DNA of 63,700 bases, filler included, from Octopus bimaculoides (taxonomy: Eukaryota), in the NCBI RefSeq assembly GCF_001194135.2. It is 7 parts of 5 records of this genome, joined end to end, with 100 filler letters (N's around TTAATTAATTAA, not from the genome) between each part and the next. Parts side by side here need not be neighbours in the genome. Positions count along the whole stretch, not along the records: positions 41,325 to 51,649 come from NC_068986.1; 6 more parts are not named here. One strand, written 5' to 3'. Positions within the stretch are counted from its first letter, which is position 1. Each line of letters opens with the position of its first letter. Under the pieces are notes generated by a model. It saw nothing but the letters and a program-made list of their open reading frames with translations, had not been told where the DNA came from and searched no databases. The translations under genes were made by a program, and so were the position numbers. This document shows, in pieces, positions 41,325 through 50,921 of the stretch.

Positions 41325-41408
<84 letters not shown>

Positions 41409-41929
41409 CTGAGTAAGAGAGAGAGAGGGTGAGATAGATAGATTGAGATTGTTGCCGGGGCCTTAAAAATTTGCTAACTTTCGAGAAAACATGGGTCTGG
41501 ACGCACAGAATGACACAGAACTTACGGAAGGGAATTGATGTGTTGTCTTCAGTGGATTAAGCTATTTCACACGTGTTGTATAGTAACCTGAGAAGAGGTA
41601 GCTGTTCATAGTACCGGGCTTGACCATTTGTCATTCAGTCTCGGATTTACAATTGTTATAAATTATTTCTTCTTTTGTATTTCTTACATCGTCATTTCCT
41701 CCTATTATTTTGAAAAAGCAGATATTTTGAATTTGCTACTTGTGCAAATGTCTAGAATTTCATTACATGGATCATTGCTGAGAGATGGAACTTTGAATTG
41801 TTGCTTATGTACGCTCGCAGCAGTACCTGTATTTCAAAACGTCTACCTTGTCACATTCTATGTCACTCTGAAATCTCCCTCAAAACTACGTTAAGAATAC
41901 GTGTGTCTGTGGACAGATCAACCACTTGC

Positions 41930-42130: not shown

Positions 42131-43820
42131 CCTGCATTATTTCTTCATCTAATGTGAATTTCGCTTTGTTAGAAGTTATTTAAGATGCGGTAATTTTATA
42201 TCGGGCAGCCAACGATTAAGAATTTATTGACCATAAGTTTGAAACCATTATGCATACTAACCTCTTGATTTATCAGAAATGACATTAAGTTCCTAAACCA
42301 CTTACGAAGTGGAGTAAATATATATTACATACTTGGATATATAGCTAGCATGTGTGAGTGTGTGTGTGTTTCGGCCCAGCATGATCTTTCATTCTTAACA
42401 CCTTATTTTCCTGCCTCCTGACTGTCATCTAAGTTTGTATCTTAAGGCTTCCACTTTACACGTCATCTCAGTTTAACTTGTTCATATTAGTCGGAAGACA
42501 CCTGTTGTTTTTCTCATTGTTTGTATTTGTAATTGTGTAACATTTTCTCCGTTTTCTCGTTGTTTTGTCCGTGTTGTCGCACATATGCGCTTGCTTTCTT
42601 TTAAAAGTTTAATGTCCTTAGCTTAGATGTTTGGGGCCTACCAATTTTGAACGGTTTTAAGTGTAACAGGCCCAAGCTGTAGTGATGATTGGAAGCTTGA
42701 CTGATGAAAGAAAGCTATGAATGTTCCGTCTTGGTTTTCCATGTCCGTCTTTGTATCCTCTATCTGTCCGTATGTTTTTATCGTGGTCCGTTACGTTCTT
42801 ATACCGTTTTCGGGATATATATANNNNNNNNNNNNNNNNNNNNNNNNNNNNNNNNNNNNNNNNNNNNNNNNNNNNNNNNNNNNNNNNNNNNNNNNNNNNN
42901 NNNNNNNNNNNNNNNNNNNNNNNNNNNNNNNNNNNNNNNNNNNNNNNNNNNNNNNNNNNNNNNNNNNNNNNNNNNNNNNNNNNNNNNNNNNNNNNNNNNN
43001 NNNNNNNNNNNNNNNNNNNNNNNNNNNNNNNNNNNNNNNNNNNNNNNNNNNNNNNNNNNNNNNNNNNNNNNNNNNNNNNNNNNNNNNNNNNNNNNNNNNN
43101 NNNNNNNNNNNNNNNNNNNNNNNNNNNNNNNNNNNNNNNNNNNNNNNNNNNNNNNNNNNNNNNNNNNNNNNNNNNNNNNNNNNNNNNNNNNNNNNNNNNN
43201 NNNNNNNNNNNNNNNNNNNNNNNNNNNNNNNNNNNNNNNNNNNNNNNNNNNNNNNNNNNNNNNNNNNNNNNNNNNNNNNNNNNNNNNNNNNNNNNNNNNN
43301 NNNNNNNNNNNNNNNNNNNNNNNNNNNNNNNNNNNNNNNNNNNNNNNNNNNNNNNNNNNNNNNNNNNNNNNNNNNNNNNNNNNNNNNNNNNNNNNNNNNN
43401 NNNNNNNNNNNNNNNNNNNNNNNNNNNNNNNNNNNNNNNNNNNNNNNNNNNNNNNNNNNNNNNNNNNNNNNNNNNNNNNNNNNNNNNNNNNNNNNNNNNN
43501 NNNNNNNNNNNNNNNNNNNNNNNNNNNNNNNNNNNNNNNNNNNNNNNNNNNNNNNNNNNNNNNNNNNNNNNNNNNNNNNNNNNNNNNNNNNNNNNNNNNN
43601 NNNNNNNNNNNNNNNNNNNNNNNNNNNNNNNNNNNNNNNNNNNNNNNNNNNNNNNNNNNNNNNNNNNNNNNNNNNNNNNNNNNNNNNNNNNNNNNNNNNN
43701 NNNNNNNNNNNNNNNNNNNNNNNNNNNNNNNNNNNNNNNNNNNNNNNNNNNNNNNNNNNNNNNNNNNNNNNNNNNNNNNNNNNNNNNNNNNNNNNNNNNN
43801 NNNNNNNNNNNNNNNNNNNA

Positions 43821-43967
43821 CACGTGACCAAGGCTGTATGAAGAGAAAGAGTAGCAGAGGGAAAAGGAGGGGAGGAAGTAGAATAAAAGTGAGCAACGAG
43901 AGGTAGAGAGAGAGAGAGAGAGATAGTAGTAGTAACGGTGAGAGGCGAAAGACGAGTAACAAGAGAT

Positions 43968-44014
<47 letters not shown>

Positions 44015-44455
44015 GAGAGAGAAGTAGTGACAGGTAGAGGCGAAGAACAGTAGACGGAAGAATGAGAGGGGGAGATAGAAATAGAGAGAGTCGCGTTTGA
44101 AAAATAGTTAAAAACTTACTGTATAGAGGTAACGCGTGCGTTCTGTCGTGATACAAACAATATATGAGTATATGCATATATATGTACATGTATGTATATA
44201 CGTTCATCCACATGTACATATAGATACATAACTGGGTACATGACATGGCAAAAGAACAAGGACAAAAATGGTAAACAAGGTGCAACAAACAAGCAGGCCA
44301 CATAGAAACATCCCCTTCATCAGCTGCCACCATTAAAACTCCGGCGTTTCGAAGAATTAAGGCAGTACGCATCGTTAAAATGGTTCTTCCCACGAACACA
44401 AATTAAATTGTTTTCGTGGAAGGTAGTGGCGGACGGAAAACAAGACAGGAAAACG
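43821..44455 (-). repeat. Second copy of the hammerhead-bearing non-coding repeat
   Basis: Reverse-complement homology to 143-180 and 330-620. Confidence 0.8.
44311..44374 (-). ncRNA. Candidate non-circularly permuted hammerhead ribozyme, copy 2 (core and all helices intact)
   Basis: Minus strand: cgatGCG-TA-CTGCC ttaat TCTTC-GAAA-CGC cggagttttaatggt GGCAG-CTGATGA-A-GGGGA. Confidence 0.7.
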
Positions 44456-44491
44456 NNNNNNNNNNGAAGAAGTACGTCCGAGCTTGGTGAT

Positions 44492-45079: not shown

Positions 45080-45156
<77 letters not shown>

Positions 45157-47050: not shown

Positions 47051-47415
47051 ATATATTGCCCCTTGTGGGCAATAAAGAAATAAGAAAAAAATATCTCCCA
47101 TTGGTTTGTTGAAAATAATCGATGAATAAAACCTTTAATTGCAGAAAACTAAAAAGCTCAACTTTGTCAAGAGAATAATCAGAATTCTAAAGTCAACAGA
47201 GAATCTATCATGAAACCAAGAATTAAATGCAAACGATGACTTAGAGAAACCCTAATGCAATGATAGCTTGAAAAAGAGAAGCAAATACATGACTATGTCA
47301 ATAGGAACCAATTAGGAGATTTTTCACATTTATTCGAAAGGTCTTGATACACACATGGTCCCAATTTAATCAACTAATGTAAATCACACTCAAAAAAAAA
47401 AAAAAAATACATACT

Positions 47416-47474
47416 CACTGGTGACAGAAAGTGGTTGGACATATCGTTAGTCCAACCACTTTCTGTTACCAGTG
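47416..47474 (+). other. 25-bp hairpin with 9-nt loop (pre-miRNA-sized)
   Basis: cactggtgacagaaagtggttggac / gtccaaccactttctgttaccagtg: 24 Watson-Crick pairs plus 1 G.U. Confidence 0.6.
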
Positions 47475-50400
47475 CAGTATTTAGTATAAAATCTCTAGAT
47501 TTAGTACAAACTCTGACCTAGCATACTTACAGCTAGGTCTTTGCACTTACATAACTGATCAGATCACCCATATCTCAGATGATTTTATCGGATTACTCCA
47601 CCGTCCTGGTAAGTATTGGAGCAAGGTATTAAAGTATGGATTGAAATTTTCAACTTTTACTCGACCGCATAATTGTGAAGACTTTCACTGAACATCTGCC
47701 TGGAATCAGAGATTTACTCATAACAGTCCGGTAATGTTGATTTCTTAACACCTCGCTCCTCTCGATTCTGAATACATCGAACAGCATTCGTTCTGTCATC
47801 GCACAGCACACCCTTTTTTTTAGAGACCTGTGATTGGTGACTGGGACACGAGTCCTACGGCACCCGTTTAACTAATATACTAATTCATATTTGTAAGCTA
47901 CGCCTGCCGGAAATATTGATTTTTGATTTCAGTAACTGGTGTCTGTGTACATTATGTTGAACATATAGACCACACACTAGACTGTGTAGCTCAGAAACCG
48001 CAGCTATACACAGCCGTTGAACTATCTAAAATAGTTCAACGGCTGCTATTTGAATAAGATTTGGGTGACCTGATGTCATTTCTCCAACTCCAGTCTAGCA
48101 TATTCAGAAAATCTAGTTAGTATCCAGTGGATACTATTTGGAGCAACTGCACGTACCTATTACATAGATATTCTAGTGCGTCTAAGATGCCATTCCAGTT
48201 TCCCTCTCCAACAAGTGTATACTCCTAAGAATACCTCTAGACGCAAAAATCTGACAGCTCAACTCCATTTTGTACATGAACGACTACTAGCCTAACGAAA
48301 TTGAAAATATTGCTAATATTATGCTTTTGAAGTTCAGGTTGATAAACCTCTCGTTGGAATCCAGGAAAATTGTTCTTAGCTTCAAAACAACACTACCTTT
48401 TCCGTTGCTTCGGAACGACCAAACATGTTGCACAAATCTTCGTTATTCAGAAGAACCATGGGATAACAGAATCTGTACGATGAAGAACAAAGCAGTTTGT
48501 TTTGGCTTATGTCTCTTTACTACCGTGTCGACTTTACCATTCTACCATATGAAATCGATAAAATATTTTCCAAACAAAAGAATGGATTGTAATGATTAAA
48601 ACCATTCACGTATATTATCTAGCATGGCCGCTGTCCAATACTTGAAACCTGTAAAAGAATAAATGAATAAATGAATATGCGAGTTTGCATGTATGTATGT
48701 ATGTATGTATGTATGTATGTATGTATGTATATACGTATGTATGTATATACGTATGTATGTATGTATATATGTATTTATGTAAATGTGTAGGTTTTTATGT
48801 ATATATATCTATAAAATGACCCGTCTGTGCATATTTCATATTGATTTCTAGTTTAGGCAAAAGGGCATAAATTTACAGAGGAGGCGAAGGAGCTTATTTC
48901 TTTGAAATACTATAAGTAGATTATAGAGAGCAGATGTTTGTAAGCTGAATTCTGTACTTGTTTCCATGCACTTAATATTTATATATATATATATTTTCTT
49001 TTACTTCATTTCATAAATGTTTAGGCATTTTCATATTTGATATGTGAAAATATGTATTTTGGAATATAAATTCCCTTGGATGATTTCTCTATGGATCATA
49101 AATTATAAAAGCATCATTTGCTTTGAAATAATTCAGAAAATGTTTAGAATGCTTACACTTAAAATGCACATAACATAATGGAATGCGTAAAACATTCAAT
49201 CAGATAACAGCTGGTCGATGTTTATCACTTCCAGCATTGCAAAAGTAGGAATAAATTAAAATCATGATGTTAGAATAATAAACAATATTCCATGAGGCCA
49301 AAGGGAGTCTTTGCCTGATCGCAAGATGTGCTTGAAGTAGAAGCCATATATCTTTCATATTACTGCTTCTCGTCTTTCAAAACGCGAGATGTTCGATACA
49401 GTAACTCTAGACATGCAATTCATAAAAGAAATAAATAGGATATTGATATATGAACCTTCTTTCATCGAATGACCTTGTTATAGATATCAGCACTATTTCA
49501 ATGGAACAGTTTTATGATTGTTTTTGTTTAGCTCCAGGGAAGTCCCAATTAAGTAGACGTATGATCATGGACACCCTTCTCGGAAACATTGTGTCGTTCG
49601 ATATATCAGTGACTCACCTTCATTATTTTACTCGTTGCGGGAGAATTGGCATAGTCTTCTGGAGATCGGATAAAATATCTCACAGTATTTCTTCTGAATA
49701 TCTGCGCTCTGAGCTCGTAGCCCACGGAGGTTAAACTCTACCTTTAGTCGTTAGAGGGATTGATAAAAACATACCAATCAGAGTGGTGGATAGGCAGAAT
49801 TATGGGAACAGTATTTGCTCCAAGTCATTGAGTTTTGACTTGAAAACTGGCTGGTAGACTTCAACCATTACACAATGATGGTATTCAGCACCTAAGGAGT
49901 TGAATACCACCATTCAACACCTTGGGTACTTTTAGTTCACTTTGTGGCAAGCTTTAAAGCCAAGCTTCCATTTTCCTCCTTTTCACCTCTCTCTGAGGCC
50001 CAGTAAAAATCTTGATTTCCTCTAAACTAAATTGTAAGAAAAGATTTTAAAAAGAACGGCGTAATTTCAAGATGAATTTGGTTGCTCGTTTGCTTTTCTG
50101 CACTGAGGAAACTTTTAAAAGATTGATTTGCTTCTTGCGCAAGATGTTGCATGAATATGACAAATGACAGCTACTCAATGAACTTGATTAATCCACTCAA
50201 ATTTGTAACTTTTTGTGACTTCAGTTCTTGGTTATTTCTAACACACGGAAACTTAAATCATGAAGTAACTAATGCCCACTCCCTAAAATTACTGACATTC
50301 AACTGAAATTTGAAACTATTATTATTACTATTATCAGAACAAATTTTCTGTGAAATTATCAGTGCTGCAAAGGTGGCAAAGATAGTAACACGCTAAGCAG

Positions 50401-50619: not shown

Positions 50620-50831
50620 CGTGATAGACATGTGAGTGGTCAAAAAGCTTCCTTTGCAATCGTGTGATTTCAGGTTAAGTCCCACTGCGTGGAACTTTGA
50701 GCAAGTGCTTTCTGCTATAACTCCGAACCGTTCAATGCCTTGTGAGTGAATTCATAAAATCGGAAACTACGTAGAAGCCTGTCGTCTGTGTGTGTGTGTG
50801 TGTGTGTGAGAGTGTGTGTGTGTGTGTGTGT

Positions 50832-50921
<90 letters not shown>

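What the first reader, a model, noticed from the sequence alone, without database searches (positions are those of the whole stretch)
44311..44374. Hammerhead ribozyme with scrambled strand order (non-circular permutation, pseudoknotted topology)
Seen: on the minus strand all conserved hammerhead nucleotides occur within 64 nt, in the order [GCG-UA-CUGCC], [UCUUC-GAAA-CGC], [GGCAG-CUGAUGA-A-GGGGA]. All three helices close. I is CUGCC/GGCAG (5 bp). III is GCGU/ACGC (4 bp, extendable by CG/CG past a 2-nt bulge). II is GGGGA/UCUUC (5 bp, two G.U) after an extra A. Established: types I, II and III are the three circular orders of these strands, and an extra nucleotide between A9 and G10.1 is tolerated in natural hammerheads. 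The order here is the reverse cyclic order and cannot arise by circular permutation. Inference: the linkers run helix I end to helix II end (about 5 nt) and helix III end to helix I end (15 nt). This fits the active fold, where helices I and II lie side by side, so a pseudoknotted monomer is plausible. Predicted cleavage is after the A at 44366. From memory, natural non-circular hammerhead permutations have been reported. I cannot check whether this octopus family is among them.
Basis: partly seen in the sequence, partly recalled or inferred. Interest (0 to 1): 0.92.

Follow-up and report, generated by a model that had tools for sequence, protein, structure and literature searches.

The report
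Lone permuted hammerhead-like motif, unproven
A 64-base stretch carries every conserved hammerhead-ribozyme nucleotide in the scrambled "type SGC" order published in 2023, but it is a single copy with no relatives found, lacks a helix the proven examples need, and prefers another fold, so it is a test candidate and not a discovery.

Summary
On the minus strand, 44374-44311 reads GCGU-A|CUGCC, UCUUC-GAAA-CGC, GGCAG-CUGAUGA-A-GGGGA. Stems I (5 bp), II (5 bp, two G.U) and III (4 bp) all close. The strand order is not new: it is the "type SGC" non-circular permutation validated by Eckert et al., NAR 2023.

In favour: the core is canonical and the match is unusually clean. I estimate about 2e-5 (any pairs) to 2e-6 (all Watson-Crick stems I and III) chance matches per 9-kb piece.

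Against:
- A Gb-sized genome would still give roughly one equally clean chance match.
- The fourth helix, present in the published alignment rows read here and required for SGC-3 cleavage, is absent.
- Stem II is marginal (-1.9 kcal/mol).
- A competing hairpin that buries GAAA dominates the predicted ensemble.
- A model built from published type-SGC sequences does not detect it.
- No second copy, relative or covariation could be found. No eukaryotic genome collection was available.

Verdict: most likely a fortuitous or non-selected match. A real new type-SGC lineage remains possible (about 0.15-0.2).

The parts
44367..44370 (-). Stem III 5' strand GCGU (16.4-16.1). U44367 is U16.1.
   Evidence: Sequence. 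Pairs with ACGC at 44347-44344, all Watson-Crick.
44366..44366 (-). A17, the predicted cleavage-site nucleotide of the GUA triplet. The scissile bond lies between 44366 and 44365.
   Evidence: Position by analogy with the hammerhead core. GUA occurs in some natural hammerheads (PMC1636495 abstract). Cleavage not tested.
44361..44365 (-). Stem I 5' strand CUGCC.
   Evidence: Pairs with GGCAG at 44328-44324, 5 Watson-Crick pairs, duplex energy -6.8 kcal/mol.
44356..44360 (-). Linker UUAAU from the distal end of stem I to the distal end of stem II.
   Evidence: 5 nt here. Typically 3 nt in published type-SGC ribozymes, and 3 nt in SGC-1 and SGC-3 by my descriptor.
44351..44355 (-). Stem II 3' strand UCUUC. 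C44351 is C11.1.
   Evidence: Pairs with GGGGA at 44315-44311, 3 Watson-Crick plus 2 G.U pairs, -1.9 kcal/mol.
44347..44350 (-). Conserved GAAA (G12, A13, A14, A15.1).
   Evidence: Sequence. It lies at the closing pair and in the loop of the competing hairpin in the minimum-free-energy fold.
44344..44346 (-). Stem III 3' strand CGC (15.2-15.4).
   Evidence: Sequence. Stem III duplex energy -3.4 kcal/mol.
44329..44343 (-). 15-nt linker CGGAGUUUUAAUGGU from stem III to stem I. In published type-SGC ribozymes this segment holds the 5' strand of the fourth helix.
   Evidence: No helix with the 3' tail beyond what shuffles give. The best adjacent pairing is 4 bp, AAUG/UGUU, with 2 G.U.
44324..44328 (-). 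Stem I 3' strand GGCAG.
   Evidence: Sequence.
44317..44323 (-). Conserved CUGAUGA (C3-A9).
   Evidence: Sequence. One of three CUGAUGA sites in the piece, and the only one with partner blocks.
44316..44316 (-). Extra A between A9 and G10.1.
   Evidence: Precedents: A10 of the CChMVd(+) hammerhead and the U at this place in HRIMA-1 and SGC-3.
44311..44315 (-). Stem II 5' strand GGGGA. G44315 is G10.1.
   Evidence: Sequence.
44327..44365 (-). Competing nested hairpin CUGCCUUAA..CUUCG[AAACGC]CGGAG..UUAA.GGUGG. It is incompatible with stems II and III.
   Evidence: It is the minimum-free-energy fold of the 64-, 86- and 151-nt transcripts. Pair probabilities are 0.05 or less for stem III and about 0 for stem II.

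Best explanation
This is an isolated stretch of non-coding, repeat-rich, eukaryote-like DNA. It meets the sequence-and-pairing descriptor of a type-SGC (site, GAAA, CUGAUGA) hammerhead, most likely without having been selected for it. It is a fortuitous match, helped by a local imperfect palindrome that supplies stem I. If the minus strand is transcribed, the RNA is predicted to sit mainly in a nested hairpin that buries GAAA and the stem II 3' strand. The doubly pseudoknotted hammerhead fold would be a rare conformer, because it has a marginal stem II and lacks the helix that joins stems I and II. At most I expect slow, Mg2+-dependent cleavage after A44366 in vitro, as seen for the published singleton GCS-1, with no biological role.

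Shown: the motif, its statistics, the missing fourth helix, the competing fold, and the absence of detectable relatives. Inferred: lack of selection and lack of in vivo activity.
For: - **One copy only.** There is no other copy of the region or of any block in the accessible sequence. The apparent similarity to 42560-42823 is not significant (z = 1-2).
- **No relatives found.** None in protein space. None in metagenome or viral pattern scans: 0 specific hits, and none of 76 loose hits had stem II or a site block.
- **Fourth helix absent**. It is present in all published rows read here, and disrupting it abolished SGC-3 cleavage.
- **Energetics.** Stems I-III sum to -12.1 kcal/mol, against a nested minimum free energy of -15.5 to -16.3. 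Validated SGC-1 and SGC-3 reach -19.6 and -17.1 with helix IV, and their nested folds contain native helices. The minimum free energy is ordinary for its composition (z = -0.09).
- **Homology model.** A covariance model built from 20 published type-SGC sequences does not report the site at E <= 10 with filters off.
- **Genome-scale chance.** About 2e-6 clean matches per 9-kb piece means roughly one per 2-3 Gb genome.
- **Published caution.** Eckert et al. expected descriptor false positives and accepted only candidates with covariation. Their singleton GCS-1 cleaved in vitro yet was judged biologically doubtful.
Against: - The match is much cleaner than typical chance matches. Stems I and III are all Watson-Crick, and G10.1-C11.1, C15.2-G16.2 and a GUA triplet are all present. 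None of 168 simulated chance hits (12.4 million sites) was as good.
- For a single randomly chosen 9-kb piece, the chance probability is only about 1e-5 to 1e-6.
- The stem lengths (5/5), the inserted nucleotide after A9 and the short I-to-II linker mirror published type-SGC ribozymes, one of which has the stem II pair UCCCC/GGGGA.
- Stems I-III are about as stable in sum as those of validated SGC-1 and SGC-3.
- No eukaryotic genome collection could be searched, so 'no relatives' is weak evidence.
- Alternative folds that mask hammerheads are normal in viroids.
Confidence: 0.55

Rival explanations
1. It is a genuine, selected type-SGC hammerhead ribozyme of a new lineage, encoded in an animal-like genome. 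The S block pairs with the G block (stem III). The C block then closes stems I and II into the canonical core. G12 acts as general base and G8 as general acid. The transcript cleaves itself after A44366, leaving a 2',3'-cyclic phosphate and a 5'-OH at C44365. The 5-nt I-to-II linker takes over the role of the loop-loop contact.
For: - All canonical core positions and quasi-conserved pairs are present, and three stems close.
- The architecture parallels validated type-SGC ribozymes: 5-bp stems I and II, an inserted nucleotide after A9, and a short linker.
- Chance probability per piece is about 1e-5 to 1e-6.
- The summed energy of stems I-III equals that of SGC-1 and SGC-3.
Against: - No helix IV, although it was required in SGC-3.
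- Stem II has tandem G.U pairs, and a shifted register that sequesters G8 and A9 is more stable.
- The hammerhead stems have near-zero probability in the nested ensemble.
- There is no second copy, no homologue and no covariation.
- Known type-SGC ribozymes come from metatranscriptomes, probably circular RNAs, and not from animal chromosomes.
Confidence: 0.17
2. It is a decaying relic. The stretch derives from a once-active permuted hammerhead, or from rearranged blocks of a hammerhead-bearing repeat or an integrated circular-RNA copy. It is no longer under selection. C-to-U transitions have turned G-C pairs into G.U pairs in stem II, and the fourth helix has been lost.
For: - UCUUC/GGGGA differs from the published stem II pair UCCCC/GGGGA by two C-to-U transitions.
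- GGAGU (44342-44338) can form wobble-rich pairs with GUUUC starting one nucleotide after stem II, the published position of the 3' strand of helix IV.
- The match is too clean for easy chance.
Against: - The GGAGU/GUUUC pairing is no better than shuffles: 93% of shuffles do as well.
- No other block remnants lie nearby.
- No sequence homology to HRIMA-1 or the SGC variants beyond the universal core.
- The story is post hoc, and no parent family is known.
Confidence: 0.13
3. It is a hammerhead assembled in trans or as a dimer. The GAAA block of one transcript pairs with the site and CUGAUGA blocks of another. This gives an ordinary three-way junction without pseudoknots.
For: - Hammerheads assemble from separate strands in vitro (established knowledge).
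- The intramolecular fold is disfavoured.
Against: - There is no tandem or multi-copy arrangement at the locus.
- The same weak stem II and competing hairpin apply.
- Nothing indicates expression.
Confidence: 0.03

Closest known systems
Type-SGC hammerhead ribozymes: HRIMA-1 motif and type-SGC variants (Eckert, Friedrich, Weinberg & Weinberg, NAR 2023, PMC10085705)
   Same: - Identical block order (site, GAAA, CUGAnGA), with all three core stems mutually crossing.
- 5-bp stem I and 5-bp stem II.
- One inserted nucleotide between A9 and G10.1.
- A short linker from stem I to stem II.
- Canonical core and cleavage position.
   Different: [quoted passage not shown]
- Linker of 5 nt against a typical 3 nt.
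- The inserted base is A, not U.
- Stem I sequence is CUGCC/GGCAG, against the invariant AUGUU/AACAU of HRIMA-1.
- Stem II has two G.U pairs.
- Not detected by a covariance model of the published sequences.
- Found on a eukaryote-like genomic scaffold, not in metatranscriptome RNAs associated with hairpin ribozymes.
- Singleton, with no covariation.
GCS-1, the singleton type-GCS candidate from Caballeronia peredens (same paper)
   Same: A lone descriptor match, in a non-circular block order, with no homologues and no covariation. The evidential status is the same as here.
   Different: The block order is different (G-C-S). It was shown to cleave in vitro (0.014 per min at 25 mM Mg2+). The authors still regarded its biological relevance as unclear.
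CChMVd (+) hammerhead with extra A10 (De la Pena & Flores 2001, as summarised in PMC3705267)
   Same: An additional A between A9 and G10.1 is compatible with activity, with a moderate rate decrease.
   Different: It is an ordinary type III hammerhead in a viroid, with loop-loop tertiary contacts.
Classic type I/II/III genomic hammerheads (Rfam RF00163, RF00008, RF02275-RF02277; family names from my own knowledge)
   Same: Same catalytic core consensus.
   Different: Those are circular orders with a three-way junction. No Rfam family of any kind matches 44311-44374 at E <= 10.

Membership tests
Hammerhead ribozyme (catalytic core) | C3-U4-G5-A6-N7-G8-A9 directly between stem I and stem II | tested here: met
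   CUGAUGA at 44323-44317, directly after GGCAG. One extra A precedes stem II.
Hammerhead ribozyme (catalytic core) | G12-A13-A14 plus the A15.1-U16.1 pair and H17 at the cleavage site | tested here: met
   GAAA at 44350-44347. U44367 pairs with A44347. A44366 is H17.
Hammerhead ribozyme (catalytic core) | Three helices I, II and III closing the core, including G10.1-C11.1 | tested here: met
   5, 5 and 4 bp. G44315-C44351 closes stem II only if A44316 is bulged. Stem II is weak (-1.9 kcal/mol).
Hammerhead ribozyme (catalytic core) | Site-specific self-cleavage, abolished by core mutations | not testable with these tools
   Needs in vitro transcription and mapping.
Hammerhead ribozyme (catalytic core) | Covariation and conservation across homologues | tested here: inconclusive
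   No homologue found in any accessible collection. No eukaryotic genome database was available.
Hammerhead ribozyme (catalytic core) | Match to curated Rfam hammerhead models | tested here: not met
   No Rfam hit overlaps 44311-44374 at E <= 10. This is expected for a non-circular permutation, so it is uninformative.
Type-SGC permuted hammerhead (Eckert et al. 2023) | 5'-to-3' block order S (site), G (GAAA), C (CUGAnGA), uninterrupted blocks | tested here: met
   The descriptor hit is of order SGC. The same descriptor recovers SGC-1 and SGC-3.
Type-SGC permuted hammerhead (Eckert et al. 2023) | Short linker joining stem I directly to stem II (typically 3 nt) | tested here: inconclusive
   5 nt (UUAAU), against 3 nt in SGC-1 and SGC-3. 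Sterically plausible but outside the typical range.
Type-SGC permuted hammerhead (Eckert et al. 2023) | Fourth helix tying the other sides of stems I and II. Its 5' strand lies just before the stem I 3' strand, and its 3' strand starts about 1 nt after stem II. | tested here: not met
   Best adjacent pairing is 4 bp with 2 G.U. The linker-tail duplex of -4.6 kcal/mol is the median of shuffles. Controls give 4-7 clean pairs.
Type-SGC permuted hammerhead (Eckert et al. 2023) | Sequence and structure homology to HRIMA-1 or the type-SGC variants | tested here: not met
   Covariance model R1 (20 published sequences, stems III and IV) with filters off gives 12 noise hits at E of 1.7 or more. None is at the locus.
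Type-SGC permuted hammerhead (Eckert et al. 2023) | Occurrence in metatranscriptome RNAs associated with hairpin ribozymes (putative circular RNA replicons) | tested here: not met
   The locus lies on a scaffold with N gaps, microsatellites and no coding ORFs or Pfam domains. It is not in a tandem or circular-like arrangement.

The most novel reading that the evidence does not exclude
This would be the first non-circularly permuted (type-SGC) hammerhead encoded in an animal-type nuclear genome. It would be an independent lineage that works without the stem I-II helix of the metatranscriptome forms. It could belong to a repeat family whose other copies lie outside the sequence I could see.
Probability: 0.15. 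Interest if true: 0.7.

Novelty: not a real feature. Interest (0 to 1): 0.3.

Why it matters
If real, it would move non-circular RNA permutations from uncultured circular RNAs into a chromosomal animal genome. It would also show that the type-SGC fold can work without its fourth helix. That bears on how easily hammerheads arise by convergence or rearrangement.

As it stands, it mainly shows that descriptor-perfect ribozyme motifs occur as singletons. They need covariation or cleavage data before they are believed, which is the standard the discoverers of type SGC applied.

Tried and rejected
1. **Second copy in the piece.** blastn with word size 7 found none. By eye, 42560-42823(+) looked related, but local alignments score z = 1-3 against shuffles and fall within the range of unrelated segments. 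Rejected.
2. **Relatives through protein space.**
   - The frame open across the motif gave no candidates in the 5.8-billion-protein search.
   - An exact look-up of the 61-aa ORF found nothing.
   - phmmer against 1.84 billion representatives gave two tandem-repeat ORFs. They match only the T/G-rich tail and are spurious.
3. **DNA pattern scans.**
   - The exact C block in viral contigs gave one phage coding hit, which is chance.
   - A strict three-block pattern in metagenomes gave 0 hits.
   - A loose pattern gave 76 matches in 77 loci, none with stem II or a site block.
   - IMG/VR lacks even the HRIMA-1 signature, so viral negatives mean little.
4. **Rfam** gave only microsatellite-driven miRNA noise. 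ARAGORN found no tRNA or SINE head.
5. **Covariance model of HRIMA-1 and SGC-3** gave no hit at the locus.
6. **Remnants of further hammerhead blocks nearby** were not found.
7. **Tandem-array or dimeric arrangement** was not found.
8. **Pfam on the ORFs** found nothing.
9. **Unmasked structure-only null.** It was swamped by microsatellites (15,194 against 65 in shuffles), so it was replaced by the masked version.

Full report
**What is there.** The minus strand from 44374 to 44311 reads CGAU-GCGU-A-CUGCC-UUAAU-UCUUC-GAAA-CGC-CGGAGUUUUAAUGGU-GGCAG-CUGAUGA-A-GGGGA.
- Stem I is CUGCC/GGCAG, 5 Watson-Crick pairs.
- Stem III is GCGU/ACGC, 4 Watson-Crick pairs, including A15.1-U16.1 and C15.2-G16.2.
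- Stem II is UCUUC/GGGGA, 5 pairs with two central G.U, and needs one extra A (44316) after A9.
- H17 is A44366.
- In the 64-mer the stems occupy 5-8/28-31 (III), 10-14/47-51 (I) and 20-24/60-64 (II). All three cross one another.
- A descriptor scan for all six possible block orders finds this site and nothing else in the piece, at strict and relaxed thresholds. The same code recovers the published ribozymes SGC-1 and SGC-3.

**The topology is already known.** Eckert, Friedrich, Weinberg and Weinberg (NAR 2023, PMC10085705) divide the hammerhead into blocks S (site), G (GAAA) and C (CUGAnGA). They describe natural, experimentally validated "type SGC" ribozymes, with 407 HRIMA-1 sequences plus 176 variants from metatranscriptomes. 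They also describe type CSG and a doubtful singleton, type GCS. The order here is exactly S-G-C.
- Shared features seen in their alignment: 5-bp stems I and II, a 2-4 nt linker from stem I to stem II, and one inserted nucleotide between CUGAnGA and stem II. That nucleotide is almost always U; here it is A. One published stem II is UCCCC/GGGGA.
- An extra A at that position is tolerated in the CChMVd(+) hammerhead (PMC3705267).
- A literature search for 2023-2026 found no report of a type-SGC hammerhead in an animal genome.

**How far beyond chance.**
- With a first-order Markov model trained on the piece, 1.35e-5 of CUGAUGA sites complete an SGC motif (I = 5, II = 5 with 0-1 extra nt, III = A-U + 3, linkers up to 15 and 60 nt).
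- Only 1.2e-6 do so with all-Watson-Crick stems I and III.
- None of 12.4 million simulated sites also had G10.1-C11.1 and C15.2-G16.2.
- The piece holds three CUGAUGA sites.
- Real sequence is richer in such topologies. Counted without any core requirement, the unmasked piece has 15,194 SGC-type triple-helix arrangements against 65 in shuffles. Nearly all come from microsatellites.
- After masking simple repeats the excess is modest: 84 against 52 ± 8, and clean ones 6 against 1.9 ± 1.4.
- Multiplying by the probability of the core letters (my arithmetic) gives about 2e-5 (any pairs) or 2e-6 (clean) matches per 9-kb piece for this order.
- A decoy-core null (630 permutations of CUGAUGA times 4 of GAAA, any order, span up to 130 nt) gave 4 hits in 2519 decoys.
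- The motif is therefore a real statistical outlier for one window. A 2-3 Gb genome still contains about 3e5 such pieces, so roughly one equally clean chance match per genome is expected. Eckert et al. explicitly expected descriptor false positives and kept only candidates with covariation.

**Features that argue against a working ribozyme.**
1. *Fourth helix.* Every published type-SGC row read here has a helix whose 5' strand lies just before the stem I 3' strand and whose 3' strand starts about one nucleotide after stem II. Disrupting it abolished SGC-3 cleavage, and compensatory changes restored it. Here the best adjacent pairing is AAUG/UGUU, 4 bp with two G.U. The best linker-tail duplex (-4.6 kcal/mol) is at the median of shuffles.
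2. *Stem II.* It is marginal (-1.9 kcal/mol). The shifted register UCUUC/GAAGG, which sequesters G8 and A9, is slightly better (-2.3).
3. *Competing fold.* The nested minimum-free-energy fold of the 64-, 86- and 151-nt transcripts is a hairpin, CUGCCUUAA..CUUCG[AAACGC]CGGAG..UUAA.GGUGG. It has GAAA at its closing pair and in its loop and excludes stems II and III. Their pair probabilities are 0.05 or less for III and about 0 for II. The fold energy is ordinary for the composition (z = -0.09).
4. *Energy comparison.* Stems I-III sum to -12.1 kcal/mol against a nested optimum of -15.5 to -16.3. SGC-1 and SGC-3 have similar sums for I-III (-11.8 and -10.6) but reach -19.6 and -17.1 with helix IV. 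Their nested optima already contain native helices.
5. *Expected rate.* Even the validated type-SGC ribozymes are slow, 0.007-0.19 per min at 25 mM Mg2+.

**Search for relatives.**
- The piece holds no other copy of the region or of any block.
- An apparent inverted copy at 42560-42823 did not survive shuffle and empirical nulls.
- No eukaryotic genome collection was available, so I tried indirect routes:
  - the reading frame open across the motif in two protein-space searches (nothing relevant);
  - an exact ORF look-up (nothing);
  - pattern scans of metagenome and viral contigs (no hit with the full motif).
- A covariance model built from 20 published type-SGC sequences (stems III and IV as structure) does not report the locus at E <= 10 with filters off. 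It is therefore not a sequence relative of HRIMA-1 or the SGC variants.
- The viral collection fails a positive control for HRIMA-1, and the metagenome collection could not be controlled. These negatives are weak.

**Context.**
- The piece looks like a draft eukaryotic scaffold. It is about 35% G+C, with N gaps at 42824-43819 and 44456-44465 and many microsatellites.
- It has no tRNA, no ORF with a Pfam domain and no tandem array around the motif.
- I could not determine the organism.
- The motif lies in a unique segment of about 215 nt between an assembly gap and a (TATG)-like microsatellite. It sits 15 nt downstream of a separate palindromic hairpin.

**Judgement.** Observation and interpretation come apart. 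The structural reading (non-circular S-G-C order, pseudoknotted, cleavage after 44366) is correct as a formal assignment and has a published precedent. Neither novelty of topology nor ribozyme function is supported.

| Reading | Probability |
|---|---|
| Fortuitous, non-selected match that mostly folds as a hairpin | about 0.55 |
| Genuine new type-SGC lineage | about 0.17 |
| Decayed relic of a hammerhead-bearing element | about 0.13 |
| Trans or dimeric assembly | about 0.03 |
| Unassigned | remainder |

Separately, I would give about one chance in three that some Mg2+-dependent cleavage is detectable in vitro. The core is intact, and the singleton GCS-1 behaved that way. Such cleavage alone would not establish biology.

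The decisive data are genome-wide copies or orthologues with covariation, plus a cleavage assay with core and compensatory mutants.

Noticed in passing
window 47414-47481 (+): Near-perfect long hairpin of about 33 bp. The minimum free energy is -51.6 kcal/mol for 47400-47495, z = -13.4. There are only sub-threshold Rfam hits (mir-2970 at 38 bits against a gathering score of 72; MIR8008). It looks like a foldback or MITE-type inverted repeat, or a miRNA-like hairpin.
   Followed up: partly
window 44388-44421 (-): Imperfect palindromic hairpin UUCCACGAAAACAAUUUAAUUUGUGUUCGUGGGAA about 15 nt upstream of the hammerhead-like motif (-15.7 kcal/mol, z = -4.45). Its relation to the motif is unknown.
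   Followed up: partly
window 42824-43819 and 44456-44465: Assembly gaps of 996 N and 10 N. The second lies only 82 nt upstream of the motif, so the upstream context of the candidate is incomplete. ORFs listed across the gaps are artefacts.
   Followed up: yes
window 41325-41410, 43962-44022, 45081-45155, 48690-48770, 50784-50920: Microsatellites: (GATA)n, (AG)n, (TA)n/(TG)n, (TATG)n and (TG)n. They account for the mir-297, mir-466, mir-1277 and mir-3149 Rfam hits. They also inflate any structure-only count 200-fold unless masked.
   Followed up: yes
window 44226-44300 (-), T/G-rich tail after the motif: Translated, this tail weakly resembles the repeat units of two long tandem-repeat ORFs in the protein library (P0001 and P0002; E-values driven by 9-11 repeated stretches). 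The similarity is probably compositional, not homology.
   Followed up: partly
window 42701 (+) and 44578 (+): These are the two other CUGAUGA sites in the piece. Neither has GAAA or site blocks that close helices in any of the six block orders.
   Followed up: yes
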